Shown in pieces: positions 38,107 through 48,953 of a stretch of 64,000 nucleotides of DNA. Both the position numbers and the translations under genes were made by a program. The stretch is from Amphiscolops sp. MND2022. Taxonomy: Eukaryota. The notes under the pieces were generated by a model, which did not search any database, was not told where the DNA came from, and saw only the letters and a program-made list of their open reading frames with translations. The stretch covers positions 27,466,001 through 27,530,000 of the forward strand of contig OZ076413.1 in the NCBI GenBank assembly GCA_964187785.1, read 5' to 3'. Every line of letters begins with the position of its first letter. The stretch's first letter is position 1.

Positions 38107-38430
38107 ATTTTTAATATTTCTGCTTTAGCAGGAATGTTATTGTAACCTCAAAGTTGGTCCTTTTTTTTCAGTCGTCAAATTTCGTCCTACTGAATAATTC
38201 AGATATTTTGTTCGGCAGTGAGTGTAAGCGTGGGAAAGCTGCCGACAACAATTCAATTCTAGTGCGATAGAACGAGCGAGTGGTAATTATCCATTCGTAT
38301 GCTGACGTCATTGAGATGAAGCGAATGAGTGTTAATTATTCGTTCGTTGAGAGCTTCGCCTGCATTCAAATGCGAATGCGAAACTTCGTCTACGCTTAGT
38401 TATATTTTCTTTAGTCCGAGAAGAATTAAA
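38107..38430 (+). repeat. ~330-bp interspersed repeat, copy 1 (copy 2 at 44972-45353)
   Basis: Direct match to 44972-45353; contains TGACGTCA at 38303-38310. Confidence 0.9.
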
Positions 38431-40426: not shown

Positions 40427-40576
40427 AATCACGATGACGTTAAAAAAGACTCTATGTCCCAGATAATGGATAAATTTAATATTTTTTCAATTGATTTCAT
40501 ATTAGATGTTGAATTAGAATTGAAGATATTTTCATGATCTATTTTTCATGTTTTTCGCCTTTCTCTCAAATGTTTT

Positions 40577-40651
40577 TCGCCTAGTGGTTAGGATGCGCGC
40601 GCACCAAGCAGGAGGTAGTGGGTTCTAACCTCGGCGAGGATTAAAATTTTT
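40577..40651 (+). mobile_element. tRNA-derived SINE head (same family as 28445)
   Basis: TCGCCTAGTGG A-box, GGTTCTAACCT B-box-like, ends AAAATTTTT. Confidence 0.55.
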
Positions 40652-41065
40652 AATGTTTGCAAATCTTGAAATGATCAAAGGATTTTTCCGTCACTGCGAT
40701 TTCCACTGTTTTAACTTCGTTTTTCGAGTCAAATTTTCTTCCACCAATTTGTTTCTTTAAATGCTTCAAGTAAGAGAAAAGCGGTTTTAGAGGCCACATG
40801 GCACCCTTTGGGAGATTTTTGGCTCTCTGAAATGTTCAAGAGTTTCCTAAGAGCCACTCTTGAGTAATTTACAATACTTTGTGCCTTTTAAGCTTTAAAT
40901 TAAAATGGTCTCAAGATGAAAGTTTCAGGATTTTTGTTTGTTCGAAAAATGTCATTTAATTAGGATGCAAAAATAAAAGGTTTTAAATGTCAAATTGGAA
41001 TTTCACTTTCAAATTTGCAATTGTATAATTTGATTCATAGTACGCCAAATGATTTTCAGAGCACA

Positions 41066-41244
41066 ATGAGTTCAACTAAAGTGTACGTTGGCAACCTGCA
41101 TCGCGATACAGACAAAGACGATCTTCGAAATGCGTTCGAGAAATACGGAGAAGTTGATGAAATCAACATGAAAGAAGGGTTTGCGTTCGTGATGATGAAA
41201 GATGATCGAGATGTGAGCGATGCCATCAAAGGGCTCCATGAAAA
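41066..41244 (+). CDS. SRSF7: SRSF3/7-type SR protein, exon 1 (RRM); CDS join(41066..41244,42803..42979,43933..44068), 163 aa
   Basis: KVYVGNL (RNP2), EGFAFV (RNP1); donor AA|GTAAGT; phases are consistent across exons. Confidence 0.9.
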
Positions 41245-42802: not shown

Positions 42803-42979
42803 GGACATTGGGTCGAGCACCAAAGTGAGGGTTGAGTACCCCAGAGAACGCAGAGCAGGTGGCGGCGGTGGAGGAGGCCGTGAATGCTACAACTGTGGCA
42901 GACCTGGACACTTCGCCCGGGAATGCCGAAGTGGTGGGGGCAGTGGCGGAGGAGGCTTCCGTGGCCGTGGTGGTGGAAG
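42803..42979 (+). CDS. SRSF7: SR protein exon 2 (end of RRM, CCHC zinc knuckle, RGG)
   Basis: Acceptor CTGCAG|; KVRVEY...[15 protein letters not shown]; donor AG|GTTATT. Confidence 0.9.
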
Positions 42980-43244
42980 GTTATTAATGTGTTCTCTCTT
43001 TAAAGCCATCTAGTATTCTTGTTTGTCTTGATCGCTGTCTTGTGTTCAATCCTGAAATTGAGTGCTTATATTTTTTAACAAAATTGAAACTGTATGCTAT
43101 ATATGGCCCTATAAAGCATATAAGATGGATGGGAATGAATCAAAATGAAATCATGGTTCTAATAAAAGATGAAATTGTTGTGATGGGTTGGTATTAGGCA
43201 TAGATGAAAACCAGTGAGTAAATTACGTCAATTGATCTTTTCAG

Positions 43245-43820
43245 ATCAGGTCCACTTCTGCAGCAGCTCGAAAGCATCATTGCACAAGTGCTTCTCACTC
43301 TGTGAGACCAGGGCAAGAACTGCTCAACTGAAAAGCTTCTCAAAACTGCGACTGCTACTACAGTTGAACCATGTACCCCCGTACACTTCACGCATTCCTA
43401 GTTTCCTTGGCATTTGAACAGGCAACCATTCCATTTTGGGGCGGGATAGCTAGCAGTGGCGGTCATGCTTCTCTTGAGTCCTAGTTTCCTCTGCTCTCTA
43501 AGTTCTAAAAAGATCGCAAGCTCTTAATTCTTTTGGGAAGCAGGCACTGATGCGCTTCGTATGTAAAGCATCGAACTGTTGAGTCTTCTTTCCTTCCTCA
43601 GGGTTTTAAACCAGCTGCATGCTGTAAAAGCGGCCGATTGAAAGAGTATAATCAACCGTGGACGTGGCATAGATGAAAAGAAAGAGGGACAAAGAAGACA
43701 TGAATTGTGGAGAAGACAGAAGGGAATAATAAACAATTGATGTTGAGACTTAAAATCTGTTGTGAAAAATGTCATGTTGCTTCTTGTCCTTACCTTAGTT
43801 CTAGCTCGATGAGGTGGCAG
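43245..43820 (+). other. Candidate poison (PTC-containing) cassette exon in SR-gene intron 2
   Basis: Acceptor TCTTTTCAG| at 43244, donor CAG|GTGAGT at 43820, in-frame TGA at 43303-43305. Confidence 0.6.
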
Positions 43821-43932
43821 GTGAGTTTTTTTTACCATCAATCAAGAAATATAATTCAACTAATTCAATCTGTGAACATATGTCTTTAGAATACAGTTGA
43901 GTTGAATTTAAAAAGCTGAATTGTTTTCACAG

Positions 43933-44068
43933 ACCTGGTGGATACGGCGATCGTGACGATGGTTACGGGGGTAGCAGAGGCCGAGACGGTGGCCGCGATC
44001 GCGATGGAGGTCGAGATAGCTACAGAGCAAGAAGCCCCAACTACGGAAGAGATGGGGGCAGATACTAA
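43933..44068 (+). CDS. SRSF7: SR protein exon 3 (RD/RS/G-rich tail, stop)
   Basis: Acceptor TTTTCACAG|; PGGYGDRDDGYGGSRGRDGGRDRDGGRDSYRARSPNYGRDGGRY*. Confidence 0.85.
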
Positions 44069-44743
44069 AAGAGTTCACTGTTCAATGCATACTCTCAACG
44101 CATTTTTAAGCCGTACTTAAGTTATATTTACTTTTAAACAATCCCAAACTAGAAAGACAACCTTGTATTCCTGTGAGCCAGGTGCAACTTTCGTGGTAAT
44201 GATCTGGCAACTATCCTCATGGATTTTTAAGGAAATGTCTTTGGTTGACTTCTGCATGACCTATTATTCGTTCGAACATGGAAGTTTGATTTTGTTTCTA
44301 TATAAATGTGCAATTAGTTGAGTATTTAGGATATCCTTTCCGTCACCTTTATCCGTAAATAAACTTTTTGGCAATCTTTTTTCTTGAGTGTAGGAGCAAA
44401 TAGTTGATTCAGCCGGTGAAAAGAAGACCATGAACAAGCGCTGAAAAGAATTTCACTTTATCAATCGTTACAAAAGGAACTCTTGTTGCGAAATCGAACT
44501 ACGGATGGTGCGAATCTTCAGCAAAAAAAAATCCGTTTCTCCTACGTATGGCAAGAGCCTTACAATCAAATCAAAGCTGAGAAATATTAGACAGTATGCA
44601 TTAAAGTTTAGTTAATTGGTTAAGGCGAGACGCTTTTGAATAATATAAAAGTGGGGTGAAATGAACGCACACCCACAGTTTTTTCTCTTAGTAGCTGGTG
44701 AGATGAATCGTTTTGACATAAAGCGAGATTTGAATGCTGACTA

Positions 44744-44971: not shown

Positions 44972-45353
44972 ATTTTTAATATTTCTGCTTTAGCAGGAAT
45001 ATTATTGAAATCCGAAAATGTCTACTTATTTTTTTTTTCAGTACAATTTTTCGGACGATCTGAATAATTCAGTTATTTTGATCGGCAGTGAGTGTAAGCG
45101 AGAGAGCTGCCGAAGACAATTCAATTCTAGTACGATGGAACGAGCGAGTGGTAATTATCCATTCGTATGCTGACGTCATTGAGATGAAGCGAGCGAATGT
45201 TCGTAATTGTGCTTTCGTTGCCCCGAGTTATTGAGATGAAGCGAATGAGTGTTAATTATTCGTTCGTTGAGAGCTTCGCCTGCATTCAAATGCGAATGCG
45301 AAACTTCGTCTACGCTTAGTAGTTATATTTTCTTTAGTCCGAGAAGAATTAAA
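44972..45353 (+). repeat. ~330-bp interspersed repeat, copy 2, with an extra ~50-bp segment bounded by TTGAGATGAAGCGA direct repeats
   Basis: Direct match to 38107-38430; TGACGTCA at 45171-45178. Confidence 0.9.
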
Positions 45354-46384: not shown

Positions 46385-48953
46385 ATGTTTGAATACCCCG
46401 TTGTGGATATCTCTGAAACTGAGTCGAAAGCATTCTCTGAAATTGCCGCACCGAAGAACGCTAGTGCGAAGAAATCCTCGAAGCCAGAACTAATCAAAAG
46501 AGTTCAGTTCGCGCGCACGGTTGAGGTTTTCAAAATCAGCCCTGTGAAACTTGCTGACGTTTCTGATGACCACCATGCCTTTTGTTTTGCCCAATTAGAG
46601 AGTGATTCTGATGAGAGTGTCTCAAACGATGAAGAATTCGCGGACTGTCCAAGTCCTGTTATTCCAGGCAAGTCTTCACCTGTGACTCCGAAAGTTGATG
46701 CATCCGTCAATGAAATTGTGCAAGGGAGAATAAAGGTACGTTTATTCTCCGAAAATGGCGAATATGAGGGAGAGCAAGATAACCCGTGTATATCCAGTCC
46801 ACAATCTTTGAACCAAATGGACCCGGAAGATGGTTTCGTCTCTTTTTCTCAGCTTAGTTTGCTTTTTGACGAGACGTTCAACTCACAGCCCAAAAGTTTC
46901 ACGAATGTTTGCAATGAGACCTCGGAGAAAGTAGTATGTCATTCAGAATACTTACGAGGAAATGAGGACAATGCCCAACAATCAAAACTAAACGAGTCGC
47001 AGCTTCCTGCTCCAGAACTCGAAGAGGTTGAACCCGGTCATAGAAGTGGAGAAGACACACCAGATGTTGAAGTTTCCGAAAGACCGGCGGTTGATTCCGT
47101 TCACTCCAGGCGCTTAGAATTATGCGTTGCTGATGATGACGTTGACAATGGGTCCACAAAAATAGACAAAATAGAATCATTTGAGATAAATGAAGTTGGC
47201 ATAGATGAGGGTACTAATTCGCCCACCATAGACAATGAAAAATGCCAATTTCTTTGTCTTCACTCTATTGCTGCTGATGAAAGCAAAGAATCCTATGAAA
47301 AGAACGTTAAACTTTTGCAAGATCTGGAAGAATCGGAAAGTGACAGTCATAAATTGCTGCCTCCAGTAGAATCGGAGAAGCCGGCTTTCGTAGGCTTCCG
47401 CACTGCCGCTGGAAAAACCGTCTCGTATTCGAAAGAATCTGAGGAAAAAAGCAGGAAACTTTTGCAAGATCTGGACGAAACGGAAAGTGACAGTCATAAA
47501 TTGCTGCCTTCAGTAGAATCGGAGAAACCGGCTTTCGTAGGCTTCCGCACTGCCGCTGGAAAAACCGTCTCGTATTCGAAAGAATCTGAGGAAAAAAGCA
47601 GGAAACTTTTGCAAGATCTGGACGAAACGGAAAGTGACAGTCATAAATTGCTGCCTCCAGTAGAATCGGAGAAACCGGCTTTCGTAGGCTTCCGCACTGC
47701 CGCTGGAAAAACCGTCTCGTATTCGAAAGAATCTGAGGAAAAAAGCAGGAAACTTTTGCAAGATCTGGACGAAACGGAAAGTGACAGTCATAAATTGCTG
47801 CCTCCAGTAGAATCGGAGAAACCGGCTTTCGTAGGCTTCCGCACTGCCGCTGGAAAAACCGTCTCGTATTCGAAAGAATCTGAGGAAAAAAGCAGGAAAC
47901 TTTTGCAAGATCTGGACGAAACGGAAAGTGAGCAAAATAGCAAGTGTTCATCTCGAGGTGAATCTAAGAAACGAGTGCTAGTTGTATCATGTGCTGAGGA
48001 CACTCTAGAGAGACGTGCAGTCAAGCAAGACTCGAAGGAAAGCATTGAAAATGAGCTCGTTGGCCTTCCCAAGCTAACTGACCATGATAGTATTGGTCTA
48101 AAAACGCCTCTTGTTGTCGAGCCACCATTTTCAGTCCGTGGAAAATTAATTGCAGGAATGACACCTGAAAACCTAAAGAATATAAATTCCGTACCTTTTG
48201 AACCCAAACCATGTGTTCATACGCCTTTTCCTTCTAAAAATAGTCATCCTCCAAACAAAGAGCTATTTTTCAATGATGAAGCTAAGCCAAGTACTGTTAT
48301 CAGTAGTTTTGGAACAGCTTCTTCGAATACCAGTCAACCTGCTTATCAATTGAGAAGTCGTTCCAAGTCGAGTAAAACTTTCAAGAAACCTCGGTGCTTG
48401 TTTGAAATTGATGAGAAAGATTCAATAACTAGTAAGAAAGATGAAAATTCCACCAGCGTGGCAGAAAAGGGATCCGCAGCGAAGAATGCAAAAACTTCTT
48501 GCGAATCTAATACTTCGAAATCAGTTGCTGGTAAACGGGGTTCGACTTCCAAATTTAAATCTCCCGTGATTGCTGATAAACTAGTCCATGGCACTCATCT
48601 GAAAATAAATTTGAAAGAGTCTACAAATTCAACAGAGTCCACTGCTATATCAAACAAAATGGGCAGAATATTGAATATCAGAACTCAATGTTTGATGAAA
48701 CTGGCTTTCGAAGATCTTGCTGTGATAAATGATCACCGCACATCTAACGCAAGAATGGCATGTACGAAAGTTTATTGTATTGCTAAGAACGTGGTCTCAG
48801 GGTACAATTTTACGTTTGGAGTGGATGAGTTTTTCTCTCCGAAAGCTGTATCTACCGGAATTGTCTATATTGGTGATAATGCTGAGTTGAATATCAAAGG
48901 AAAGAAAACAATTGGCCCCCTTGATTTTCATCGTGCCATGTTGACTATTCCAG
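46385..48953 (+). CDS. BRCA2: BRCA2 homolog, large exon (acidic N-terminus, BRC array, start of helical domain); 5' end uncertain, exon acceptor at 46337
   Basis: Four FRTAAGKTVSYSKESEEKSRKLLQDL BRC motifs; ...LDFHRAMLTIP|G; donor CAG|GTGAGT. First in-frame ATG at 46385; an upstream coding exon cannot be excluded. Confidence 0.85.
47310..47931 (+). repeat. Coding tandem repeat, 147 bp / 49 aa x 4.2, each unit one BRC motif
   Basis: CTTTTGCAAGATCTGGA at 47312, 47459, 47606, 47753 and 47900; only a few nucleotide differences among units. Confidence 0.98.

What the first reader, a model, noticed from the sequence alone, without database searches (positions are those of the whole stretch)
43245..43820. 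Candidate ancient poison exon in the SRSF3/7 gene
Seen: intron 2, right after the zinc-knuckle exon, contains a strong acceptor (TCTTTTCAG) and a consensus donor (CAG|GTGAGT). These define a 576-nt exon with an in-frame TGA after ~20 codons, 515 nt upstream of the next junction. This donor is stronger than the constitutive exon-2 donor (GTTATT). Established: vertebrate SRSF3 and SRSF7 autoregulate by including a poison exon at the corresponding position (AS-NMD). Inference: the circuit is conserved or convergent in this distant lineage.
Basis: partly seen in the sequence, partly recalled or inferred. Interest (0 to 1): 0.7.

Follow-up and report, generated by a model that had tools for sequence, protein, structure and literature searches.

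The report
Conserved poison exon in acoel RNA-binding gene

Summary

It is not chance. In a syntenic locus of a related species (L022) the only sizeable non-coding block that aligns across 13 kb is this interval. Similarity starts about 12 nt before the AG and stops just after GTGAGT (blastn E 1e-61 and 8e-26; 72% overall, blocks of 80-97%), while the rest of both introns does not align. The same TGA stays in frame.

In Symsagittifera roscoffensis the orthologous intron carries a 430-nt unit with the same acceptor 16-mer (one mismatch), the same motif before the donor, the intron's only CAG|GTGAGT, and an in-frame TGA after 8 codons.

All frames hold stops, and lengths differ by non-multiples of 3 (576/698/430), so the exon is non-coding. 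UPF1, UPF2, UPF3 and Mago are encoded in the genome.

No RNA data exist for this species, so inclusion, decay and autoregulation are inferred.

The gene is not SRSF3/7. It encodes an RRM, a CCHC knuckle and a Gly/Arg-rich tail, and a selective SRSF3-like gene lies elsewhere in the genome. Descent from the vertebrate exon is unsupported.

Verdict: real, a new member of a known kind.

The parts
41066..41244 (+). Coding exon 1 (ATG at 41066), the first two thirds of the RRM. Donor is AAAA|GTAAGT, phase 2.
   Evidence: Pfam RRM_1 E 1.4e-13. 82% nt identity to L022. The intron position is the same in S. roscoffensis.
42803..42979 (+). Coding exon 2: end of the RRM, Gly run, CCHC zinc knuckle and Gly/Arg linker. 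It has a weak donor, AAG|GTTATT.
   Evidence: Pfam zf-CCHC E 7.2e-9. 78% identity to L022. The donor lacks +5G in all three species.
42980..43230 (+). Upstream part of intron 2; not conserved.
   Evidence: No blastn hit to L022. Its length varies: 265, 628 and 2268 nt in the three species.
43231..43244 (+). 3' splice site of the poison exon (TTGATCTTTTCAG).
   Evidence: Identical in L022. S. roscoffensis has TGATCTTTTTAG|ATCA, a 16-mer with 1 mismatch, where 0.04 matches are expected in 17 kb at up to 2 mismatches.
43245..43820 (+). Poison cassette exon, 576 nt, non-coding.
   Evidence: blastn to L022: 43231-43510 at 76% (E 1e-61) and 43705-43828 at 82% (E 8e-26). Identical blocks reach 26 nt. 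Stops occur in all frames and indels are not multiples of 3. Single copy in the genome. No Rfam hit.
43303..43305 (+). First in-frame stop (TGA) on inclusion, 515 nt upstream of the last junction.
   Evidence: The homologous TGA is in frame in L022. An in-frame TGA follows after 8 codons in S. roscoffensis.
43785..43810 (+). A 26-nt block identical in L022, just before the donor. It contains the motif GTCCTTA..TAGCTCG, which S. roscoffensis shares.
   Evidence: The motif's rate in this genome is about 3e-8 per site.
43821..43826 (+). 5' splice site of the poison exon (GTGAGT after CAG).
   Evidence: Identical in L022 and S. roscoffensis. In S. roscoffensis it is the only CAG|GTGAGT in the 2.8-kb intron.
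43827..43932 (+). Short downstream intron between the poison exon and exon 3.
   Evidence: Barely alignable between the species, and the intron from donor to exon 3 is short in all three: 112, 88 and 98 nt.
43933..44068 (+). Coding exon 3: RG/RD/GY-rich tail ending ...YRARSPNYGRDGGRY, with stop TAA at 44066-44068.
   Evidence: The tail motif is shared with L022, S. roscoffensis and the C11 paralog.

Best explanation
The interval 43245-43820 is a real, evolutionarily maintained non-coding cassette exon (a poison exon). It lies in intron 2 of a gene that encodes a 163-aa acoel RNA-binding protein: an RRM, a CCHC zinc knuckle and a Gly/Arg/Asp-rich tail.

In the productive mRNA, exon 2 (weak donor) is joined directly to exon 3. 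When the exon is included, translation stops at a TGA 20 codons in. That stop lies more than 500 nt before the last exon junction and ahead of roughly 0.9 kb of 3' UTR. The mRNA should therefore be an NMD substrate, or at most yield a protein that lacks the tail.

The most likely purpose is homeostatic negative feedback on the level of this RNA-binding protein. The protein itself or other splicing factors would bind the conserved blocks inside the exon and promote its inclusion.

Shown here: the anatomy of the exon, its conservation with exact splice-site boundaries in three species, its lack of coding capacity, the in-frame stop in all three species, and the presence of NMD and EJC genes.

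Inferred: that the exon is actually included, that the isoform is degraded, and that the protein regulates itself.
For: - Coordinates, frame and stop are verified.
- The related syntenic locus L022 has exons at 65-82% identity and the PE at 72% overall, with 30-nt windows of 80-97% at both ends and in the centre. Introns align no better than forced background, 44-57%.
- In the MAFFT alignment, identity begins about 12 nt before the AG and ends right after GTGAGTTT.
- The PE is the only sizeable conserved non-coding block in 13 kb compared.
- The same TGA stays in frame in L022 despite a -4 and a +1 indel.
- S. roscoffensis has an orthologous 3-exon gene with a 430-nt unit in intron 2. It has the acceptor 16-mer, the pre-donor motif (background rate), the only strong donor of the intron, a position 98 nt before exon 3 (112 and 88 nt in the others), and a TGA after 8 codons.
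- Stops occur in every frame, and the lengths 576, 698 and 430 nt differ by non-multiples of 3.
- The short peptide encoded up to the stop is not conserved in S. roscoffensis.
- UPF1, UPF2, UPF3 and Mago nashi are all found in the genome.
- Precedent: SRSF3 exon 4 is a 456-nt stop-bearing alternative exon, its isoform is degraded by NMD, and SRSF3 promotes its inclusion (PMC10321290). Poison exons arise repeatedly in RNA-binding-protein genes (PMC4379411).
Against: - There is no RNA evidence. The only public runs that hold this DNA are genomic contigs without any joints.
- The interior of the S. roscoffensis unit is not significantly similar to the other two, and blastn and nhmmer did not find it. 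Homology there rests on the end motifs, position and frame.
- NMD rules in acoels are unstudied.
- Autoregulation is purely an analogy; no binding motif for this protein is known.
- The polymorphism data are uninformative: 7 SNPs in 3.8 kb, none in the exon, with about 1 expected.
Confidence: 0.7

Rival explanations
1. It is a decoy or regulatory pseudo-exon. The conserved splice sites and internal elements recruit spliceosome components but are rarely joined into mRNA. Instead they control retention of intron 2 or the speed of exon 2 to exon 3 splicing.
For: The conserved splice sites and interior blocks fit a decoy equally well. The constitutive exon-2 donor is weak in all three species. The downstream intron is kept short.
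Against: An in-frame stop close to the exon start is kept in all three species, and in L022 by compensating indels. A decoy does not need this.
Confidence: 0.1
2. It is an alternative coding exon whose purpose is a stable truncated protein: the RRM and zinc knuckle without the Gly/Arg tail, plus a short new C-terminus. This protein could act as a competitor of the full-length form.
For: The 19-20 residue tails in the window and L022 are similar (LLQQLE.IIA), and 2 of 5 substitutions there are synonymous. Truncated SRSF3 from exon-4 mRNA is reported (PMC10321290).
Against: The S. roscoffensis tail is an unrelated 7 residues. Conservation continues for about 500 nt beyond the stop, including the strongest 26-nt block at the 3' end, which coding cannot explain.
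Confidence: 0.1
3. It is an independent intronic element, such as an ncRNA gene, an enhancer, or an exon of another transcript, that merely happens to be bounded by AG and GT.
For: Intronic conserved blocks can be enhancers or hosted ncRNAs.
Against: There is no Rfam family. The fold is no more stable than shuffled sequence, z = +0.95. Conservation boundaries coincide with the splice-site consensus on the gene's own strand in three species, and the reverse strand would read AC...CT. The AATAAA at 43727 is not conserved, so it is not an alternative terminal exon.
Confidence: 0.05
4. It is a chance pairing of splice-like motifs in a neutral intron.
For: AG and GT motifs are common, and no RNA data exist.
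Against: blastn E 1e-61 and 8e-26 against an otherwise unalignable intron. The end motifs recur in S. roscoffensis, with a joint chance expectation far below 1e-5.
Confidence: 0.02

Closest known systems
SRSF3 exon 4 and the SRSF7 poison cassette exon (vertebrate SR-protein AS-NMD autoregulation)
   Same: A long non-coding cassette exon (456 nt in SRSF3, 576 nt here) with an early stop. It lies between the exon that ends the RNA-binding part and the exon that encodes the low-complexity tail. It is conserved as well as the coding exons. The host is a small RRM protein, and SRSF7 also has a CCHC knuckle. The RRM is split by an intron at the same place and phase as in this genome's own SRSF3-like gene (PMC10321290).
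   Different: The host is not an SRSF3/7 orthologue and has no RS domain. This genome's SRSF3-like locus shows no copy of the exon's end motifs and no strong internal donor. Its interior evolves fast: it is unalignable between acoel genera, whereas the vertebrate exons are ultraconserved. Inclusion, NMD and autoregulation are unproven here.
RBM3 / CIRBP poison exons (RRM plus Gly/Arg-rich cold-shock proteins)
   Same: A single RRM followed by an RGG/GY-rich tail, with expression set by inclusion of a poison exon (titles and abstracts of PMC10165353 and PMC10350819).
   Different: Those proteins have no zinc knuckle. No orthology was shown, and temperature control is unknown here.
Plant RSZ/RS2Z SR proteins, RZ-1 glycine-rich proteins and AtGRP7/8 autoregulation
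   Same: The nearest named sequence relatives outside acoels are RSZ21/23 and RZ1A, which have an RRM, a CCHC knuckle and a Gly-rich region. From my own knowledge, these plant genes are regulated by unproductive splicing within a long intron.
   Different: Sequence identity is only 30-40%. They belong to a different kingdom, intron positions were not compared, and the plant facts were recalled, not tested here.
Repeated origin of unproductive splicing in RNA-binding-protein genes (Lareau & Brenner 2015, PMC4379411)
   Same: A poison exon needs only splice sites, a stop and regulator binding sites. Such exons arise independently in paralogues and become constrained soon after origin. This locus fits that picture.
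   Different: That study did not cover Xenacoelomorpha or this gene family.

Membership tests
Poison cassette exon (AS-NMD / unproductive splicing) | Internal exon bounded by a 3' splice site (AG) and a 5' splice site (GT), inside an intron of a protein-coding gene and on the gene's strand | tested here: met
   TCTTTTCAG| at 43245 and CAG|GTGAGT at 43820. Both sites are conserved in L022 and S. roscoffensis.
Poison cassette exon (AS-NMD / unproductive splicing) | Inclusion introduces a premature in-frame stop codon | tested here: met
   TGA after 20, 19 and 8 codons in the three species.
Poison cassette exon (AS-NMD / unproductive splicing) | The stop lies more than 50-55 nt upstream of a downstream exon-exon junction | tested here: met
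   515 nt in the window. About 640 nt in L022 and about 405 nt in S. roscoffensis, computed from the coordinates.
Poison cassette exon (AS-NMD / unproductive splicing) | Sequence constraint above the intron background without coding capacity | tested here: met
   72% identity against an unalignable intron, stops in all frames, and indels that are not multiples of 3.
Poison cassette exon (AS-NMD / unproductive splicing) | The exon is seen in spliced RNA as an alternative isoform | not testable with these tools
   Only four DNA-contig runs hold the locus, with no joints. Two scans of metagenome/metatranscriptome contigs found nothing.
Poison cassette exon (AS-NMD / unproductive splicing) | The inclusion isoform is stabilised when NMD is blocked, and the NMD machinery is present | tested here: inconclusive
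   The machinery is present: UPF1, UPF2, UPF3 and Mago. Stabilisation needs an experiment.
Negative autoregulation by the encoded protein | [quoted passage not shown] | not testable with these tools
   Only conserved interior blocks and a recurring GCTTCTC motif were seen. No binding data exist.
SRSF3/SRSF7 orthologue (SR protein) | The RRM is specifically closest to SRSF3/7 | tested here: not met
   The PDB search gives hnRNP A2/B1, hnRNP A1, RBM4B, SRSF6, SRSF7, SRSF1 and SRSF3 all within E 5e-9 to 1e-6. The orthologue's first 110 residues hit SRSF1 best. In the same genome, L018 hits SRSF3 and SRSF7 at 1e-16 to 1e-15 with a gap of 7 orders of magnitude to the next match.
SRSF3/SRSF7 orthologue (SR protein) | C-terminal RS domain rich in Arg-Ser dipeptides | tested here: not met
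   The 62-aa tail is 40% Gly, 23% Arg, 13% Asp and 8% Ser. It has 3 RS/SR dipeptides against 10 RG/GR and 8 RD/DR.
SRSF3/SRSF7 orthologue (SR protein) | CCHC zinc knuckle after the RRM (the SRSF7 feature) | tested here: met
   zf-CCHC E 7.2e-9. However, loci L005 and L006 carry knuckle exons that look more SRSF7-like.
SRSF3/SRSF7 orthologue (SR protein) | Shared intron position inside the RRM | tested here: met
   A phase-2 intron after ...LHEK in the window (GAAAA|GTAAGT) and after ...LDGK in the SRSF3-like gene (GGAAA|GTAAGA). This is compatible with distant common descent but not specific proof of it.

The most novel reading that the evidence does not exclude
The exon is not convergent but inherited. 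This acoel RRM, zinc-knuckle and RGG family would be a diverged offshoot of the SRSF3/7 lineage. It shares the RRM intron position and phase, and the exon layout of RRM-end exon, then poison exon, then tail exon. On this reading it kept the ancestral poison-exon circuit while swapping its RS tail for an RG/GY tail. That would place the origin of the SRSF3/7 poison exon at or before the base of Bilateria.
Probability: 0.1. Interest if true: 0.65.

Novelty: new member of a known kind. Interest (0 to 1): 0.42.

Why it matters
Poison exons are the main known way in which splicing regulators hold their own levels steady. They have been documented mostly in vertebrates, flies, nematodes, plants and fungi.

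This locus gives a well-defined, testable candidate in Xenacoelomorpha, a lineage important for reconstructing early bilaterians. My literature searches found no report of this kind for acoels.

It also shows a different mode of constraint from the vertebrate ultraconserved exons. The splice-site-proximal 15-30 nt, the early stop, and the short downstream intron persist across genera, while the interior turns over.

The host gene has an RGG tail and not an RS tail. This adds to the evidence that the mechanism is recruited repeatedly by any abundant RNA-binding protein.

Practically, it flags an exon that automatic annotation of these genomes is likely to miss or to treat as an error.

Tried and rejected
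- **Rfam** scan of the whole window found no family.
- **Repeat or transposon origin** is rejected. The 576 nt are single-copy in the genome, and three other genomic matches to the acceptor 16-mer are chance, with no RRM gene and no further similarity nearby.
- **Stable RNA structure** is rejected: MFE z = +0.95 against shuffles.
- **RNA evidence** could not be had. The look-up of sequencing runs returned only four runs of one sample that hold introns and exons alike. Read laying showed single genomic contigs with no joints, plus a second haplotype with 7 SNPs, none in the exon, which is statistically uninformative.
- **blastn, dc-megablast and nhmmer** of the exon against the S. roscoffensis locus and against paralogues found nothing significant. 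A local-alignment test of the exon interiors was no better than shuffles. The S. roscoffensis homologue was recognised only by reading the intron and then testing the end motifs.
- **MAFFT** of the three exons misplaces the S. roscoffensis 3' end and was not used for that end.
- **Alternative terminal exon** is rejected: the AATAAA at 43727 is GCTAAA in L022.
- **Alternative coding exon** is rejected: stops in all frames and a non-conserved peptide.
- **Protein searches.** The search for homologous proteins with P0020 was swamped by Gly-rich words. P0063, a 102-aa Tara transcript product that ends just after the knuckle, has no contig on record, so it could not be checked as a possible truncated isoform. 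L020 turned out to be the same assembly as the window, at 100% identity.
- **Metagenome scans** for two conserved 21-25-mers found nothing.
- **The C11 paralogue** (L019) shows no similar exon by nhmmer.
- **Not done:** I did not submit a typed spliced protein to look for truncated-isoform products.

Full report
**1. The observation**

Reading the window gives a three-coding-exon gene on the + strand.
- Exon 1 is 41066-41244 (ATG at 41066, donor AAAA|GTAAGT).
- Exon 2 is 42803-42979 (acceptor GCTGCAG|G, donor AAG|GTTATT).
- Exon 3 is 43933-44068 (acceptor TTTTCACAG|A, stop TAA).

The product is 163 aa. Pfam finds RRM_1 in exon 1 (E 1.4e-13) and zf-CCHC in exon 2 (E 7.2e-9).

- The acceptor is TCTTTTCAG|A at 43245.
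- The donor is CAG|GTGAGT, ending the exon at 43820.
- The length is 576 nt.
- The in-frame TGA is at 43303-43305, 20 codons after the junction and 515 nt before the 43820 junction.

The PE donor fits MAG|GTRAGT at 9 of 9 positions, against 7 of 9 for the exon-2 donor. CAGGTRAGT occurs only twice in 64 kb, with 0.52 expected. Because 576 is a multiple of 3, the exon poisons through its stop codons (7 in frame) and not through a frameshift.

**2. What organism and what gene**

The closest named proteins to an intronless paralogue and to the gene itself come from the acoels Convolutriloba macropyga and Symsagittifera roscoffensis (taxonomy). The window therefore comes from an acoel (Xenacoelomorpha, probably Convolutidae or near). 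The genome is 1.07 Gb.

The gene is not an SRSF3/7 orthologue.
- Against solved structures its RRM hits hnRNP A2/B1, hnRNP A1, RBM4B, SRSF6, SRSF7, SRSF1 and SRSF3 without discrimination (E 5e-9 to 1e-6).
- The first 110 residues of the S. roscoffensis orthologue hit SRSF1 best.
- The best hits across 1.8 billion representatives outside acoels look RBM4/lark-like.
- The named relatives are plant RSZ21/23 and RZ1A.
- The tail after the knuckle is 40% Gly, 23% Arg and 13% Asp, with 3 RS/SR dipeptides, so it is not an RS domain.
- The same genome has a locus on C3 (L018/L034) whose RRM matches SRSF3 (8.5e-17) and SRSF7 (2.9e-15) selectively. That locus continues with ICGCRVRVELS and RS-rich exons.
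- Two further loci have SRSF7-like knuckle exons.

The window gene belongs to a small acoel family: paralogues on C11 without a knuckle, on C4 without introns, and on C3 and C2. NCBI calls the S. roscoffensis orthologue 'ctenidin-3-like', a label driven by its glycine content.

One point favours a distant link to SRSF3/7. The intron that splits the RRM sits at the same codon and phase in the window gene (…LHEK, AA|GT) and in the genome's SRSF3-like gene (…LDGK, AA|GT).

**3. Is the candidate exon real? Conservation**

No RNA data could be found. The only runs that hold this DNA are four runs of one sample. Their contigs cover exons and introns alike and show no joints. The test therefore had to be comparative.

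Through the exon-1 ORF product I reached a syntenic contig of a related species. This is L022, with 85% protein identity in exon 1, the same RPEL/SAP gene upstream and BRCA2 downstream. blastn of 13 kb of the window against it gives hits only to these regions:
- the upstream gene;
- exon 1 (81%), exon 2 (84%) and exon 3 (69%);
- BRCA2;
- a 34-nt 3'-UTR block;
- two blocks that together are the candidate exon: 43231-43510 (76%, E 1e-61) and 43705-43828 (82%, E 8e-26).

Nothing else in intron 1 (1558 nt) or in the remainder of intron 2 aligns.

In the MAFFT alignment, identity begins about 12 nt upstream of the AG and ends with GTGAGTTT. By segment, identity over aligned positions is:
- exons 0.82, 0.78 and 0.65;
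- poison exon 0.72;
- introns 0.44-0.57, which is forced background.

Thirty-nt windows reach 0.80-0.97 at the 5' end, in the centre (43426-43512) and at the 3' end. Identical runs reach 26 nt.

The L022 exon is 698 nt, which is not congruent with 576 modulo 3. Both exons have stops in all three frames. A -4 and a +1 indel together keep the very same TGA in frame in L022 (19 codons in). This is the signature of a non-coding exon whose splice sites and early stop are under selection.

**4. A third species**

The S. roscoffensis orthologue (P0182, locus L021) has the same three coding exons and intron positions. Automated similarity searches found nothing in its 2.8-kb intron 2. The intron nevertheless contains exactly one CAG|GTGAGT, 98 nt upstream of exon 3. 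The distances are 112 nt in the window and 88 nt in L022.

Reading upstream shows three further features.
- TGATCTTTTTAG|ATCA matches the window's acceptor 16-mer with one mismatch. At up to 2 mismatches, 0.04 matches are expected in the 17-kb locus on both strands.
- Just before the donor lies GTCCTTA..TAGCTCG. Among all fetched loci this occurs only at the homologous spot of the three species. Its background rate in the window's genome is about 3e-8 per site.
- The resulting unit, L021:10676-11105, is 430 nt and brings a TGA into frame after 8 codons.

Its interior is not significantly similar to the other two, so homology rests on both ends, position, orientation and frame. The joint chance of these features is far below 1e-5. 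I take the exon to predate the split of these genera. I flag that this third case is weaker than the L022 case.

**5. What it is not**

- It is single-copy, so not a repeat.
- It has no Rfam family.
- It folds no better than shuffled sequence, z = +0.95.
- The AATAAA inside it is not conserved, so it is not an alternative last exon.
- The short peptide up to the stop is similar in the window and L022 but unrelated in S. roscoffensis. Conservation also runs about 500 nt past the stop. A coding role therefore cannot explain it.
- On the opposite strand the boundaries would read AC...CT, so it belongs to this gene's strand.

**6. Mechanism**

Shown:
- a conserved cassette exon with a strong donor;
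- a constitutive exon-2 donor that lacks +5G in all three species;
- a short downstream intron;
- an early stop far upstream of the last junction.

Also shown: the genome encodes UPF1, UPF2, UPF3 and Mago nashi.

Inferred: inclusion yields an NMD substrate, and inclusion rises with the level of this protein or of other splicing factors, giving homeostatic feedback. The models are SRSF3 exon 4 (456 nt, stop-bearing, NMD, inclusion promoted by SRSF3; PMC10321290) and RNA-binding proteins in general (PMC4379411). The conserved interior blocks (43301-43344, 43431-43502, 43770-43810; GCTTCTC recurs three times) are candidate regulator binding sites.

My estimates are about 0.7 that this is an unproductive-splicing exon and about 0.4 that the regulator is the protein itself.

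**7. Comparison and novelty**

Functionally and architecturally this is closest to the SRSF3/SRSF7 poison exons, and by protein type to RBM3/CIRBP and the plant RSZ/RZ-1/GRP7 cases. It fails two membership tests for SRSF3/7 (specific RRM similarity and an RS domain), so it should not be filed as 'the SRSF3/7 poison exon'. This genome's SRSF3-like locus shows none of the exon's end motifs and no strong internal donor.

The shared RRM intron and the same exon order leave roughly 10% for true common descent.

AS-NMD of RNA-binding-protein genes is well known. A full-text search for 'acoel' together with NMD, poison-exon and alternative-splicing terms listed no acoel report among the ranked results. 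I rate it a new member of a known kind, well supported by comparative evidence and still awaiting RNA proof.

**8. Limits**

- There is no transcript evidence.
- Only two comparison species were available, one of them weak in the exon interior.
- The organism's identity is inferred from best hits.
- Facts about plant genes and about the position of the SRSF7 exon are from memory, not tested here.

Noticed in passing
window 44285-44318 (L022:12791-12824): A 34-nt block in the 3' UTR is 100% identical between the window and the related species, better than any coding exon. It lies about 40-45 nt upstream of the AATAAA in both. It is not found in S. roscoffensis. It may be a 3'-UTR regulatory or polyadenylation-associated element.
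   Followed up: partly
window 41052-41059; L022:9988-9995: An acceptor-like TTTTCAG sits 6-9 nt upstream of the start ATG in the window gene, in the L022 orthologue and in two paralogues, but not in S. roscoffensis. There is no conserved upstream exon within 500 nt. This implies a 5'-UTR intron with a distant leader exon, or spliced-leader trans-splicing.
   Followed up: no
G000:C3:47814738-47817000 (L018/L034); also L005 (C7:51544035) and L006 (C5:7920121): The genome's genuine SRSF3-like gene, with an RRM selectively matching SRSF3/7, ICGCRVRVELS and RS-rich exons, lies on another chromosome. Two further loci have SRSF7-like zinc-knuckle exons. Whether these carry their own poison exons was not tested.
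   Followed up: partly
G000:C4:54913917-54914327 (L014:1492-1902): An intronless paralogue (136-aa ORF with RRM and CCHC knuckle) has orthologues at 75-81% identity in other acoels, including Convolutriloba macropyga, so it is an old, retained and probably retroposed copy.
   Followed up: partly
window 47285-47931 and L022:19544-20186: The 147-nt tandem array inside BRCA2 (copies 95-97% alike within the window) is also present as a 147-nt-periodic array in the related species, at 72-76% identity between species. The array itself is therefore older than the species split, and its near-identical copies suggest concerted evolution or repeated amplification rather than one recent event.
   Followed up: partly
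window 38107-38430 and 44972-45353; L019:4170-4400: An interspersed repeat of about 330 nt, 86-89% alike, flanks the gene on both sides and also sits in intron 1 of the C11 paralogue.
   Followed up: no
window 40566-40640: A tRNA-like stretch (…TAGTGGTTAGGATG…GGTTCTAACC…) lies upstream of the gene. It may be a tRNA-derived SINE or a tRNA fragment. It did not reach any Rfam threshold.
   Followed up: no
window 41853, 42563, 42592, 42755, 42768, 43206, 44207: Two of the four genomic runs carry a second haplotype with seven SNPs across the gene. All lie in introns or the 3' UTR, and none in coding exons or in the poison exon.
   Followed up: yes
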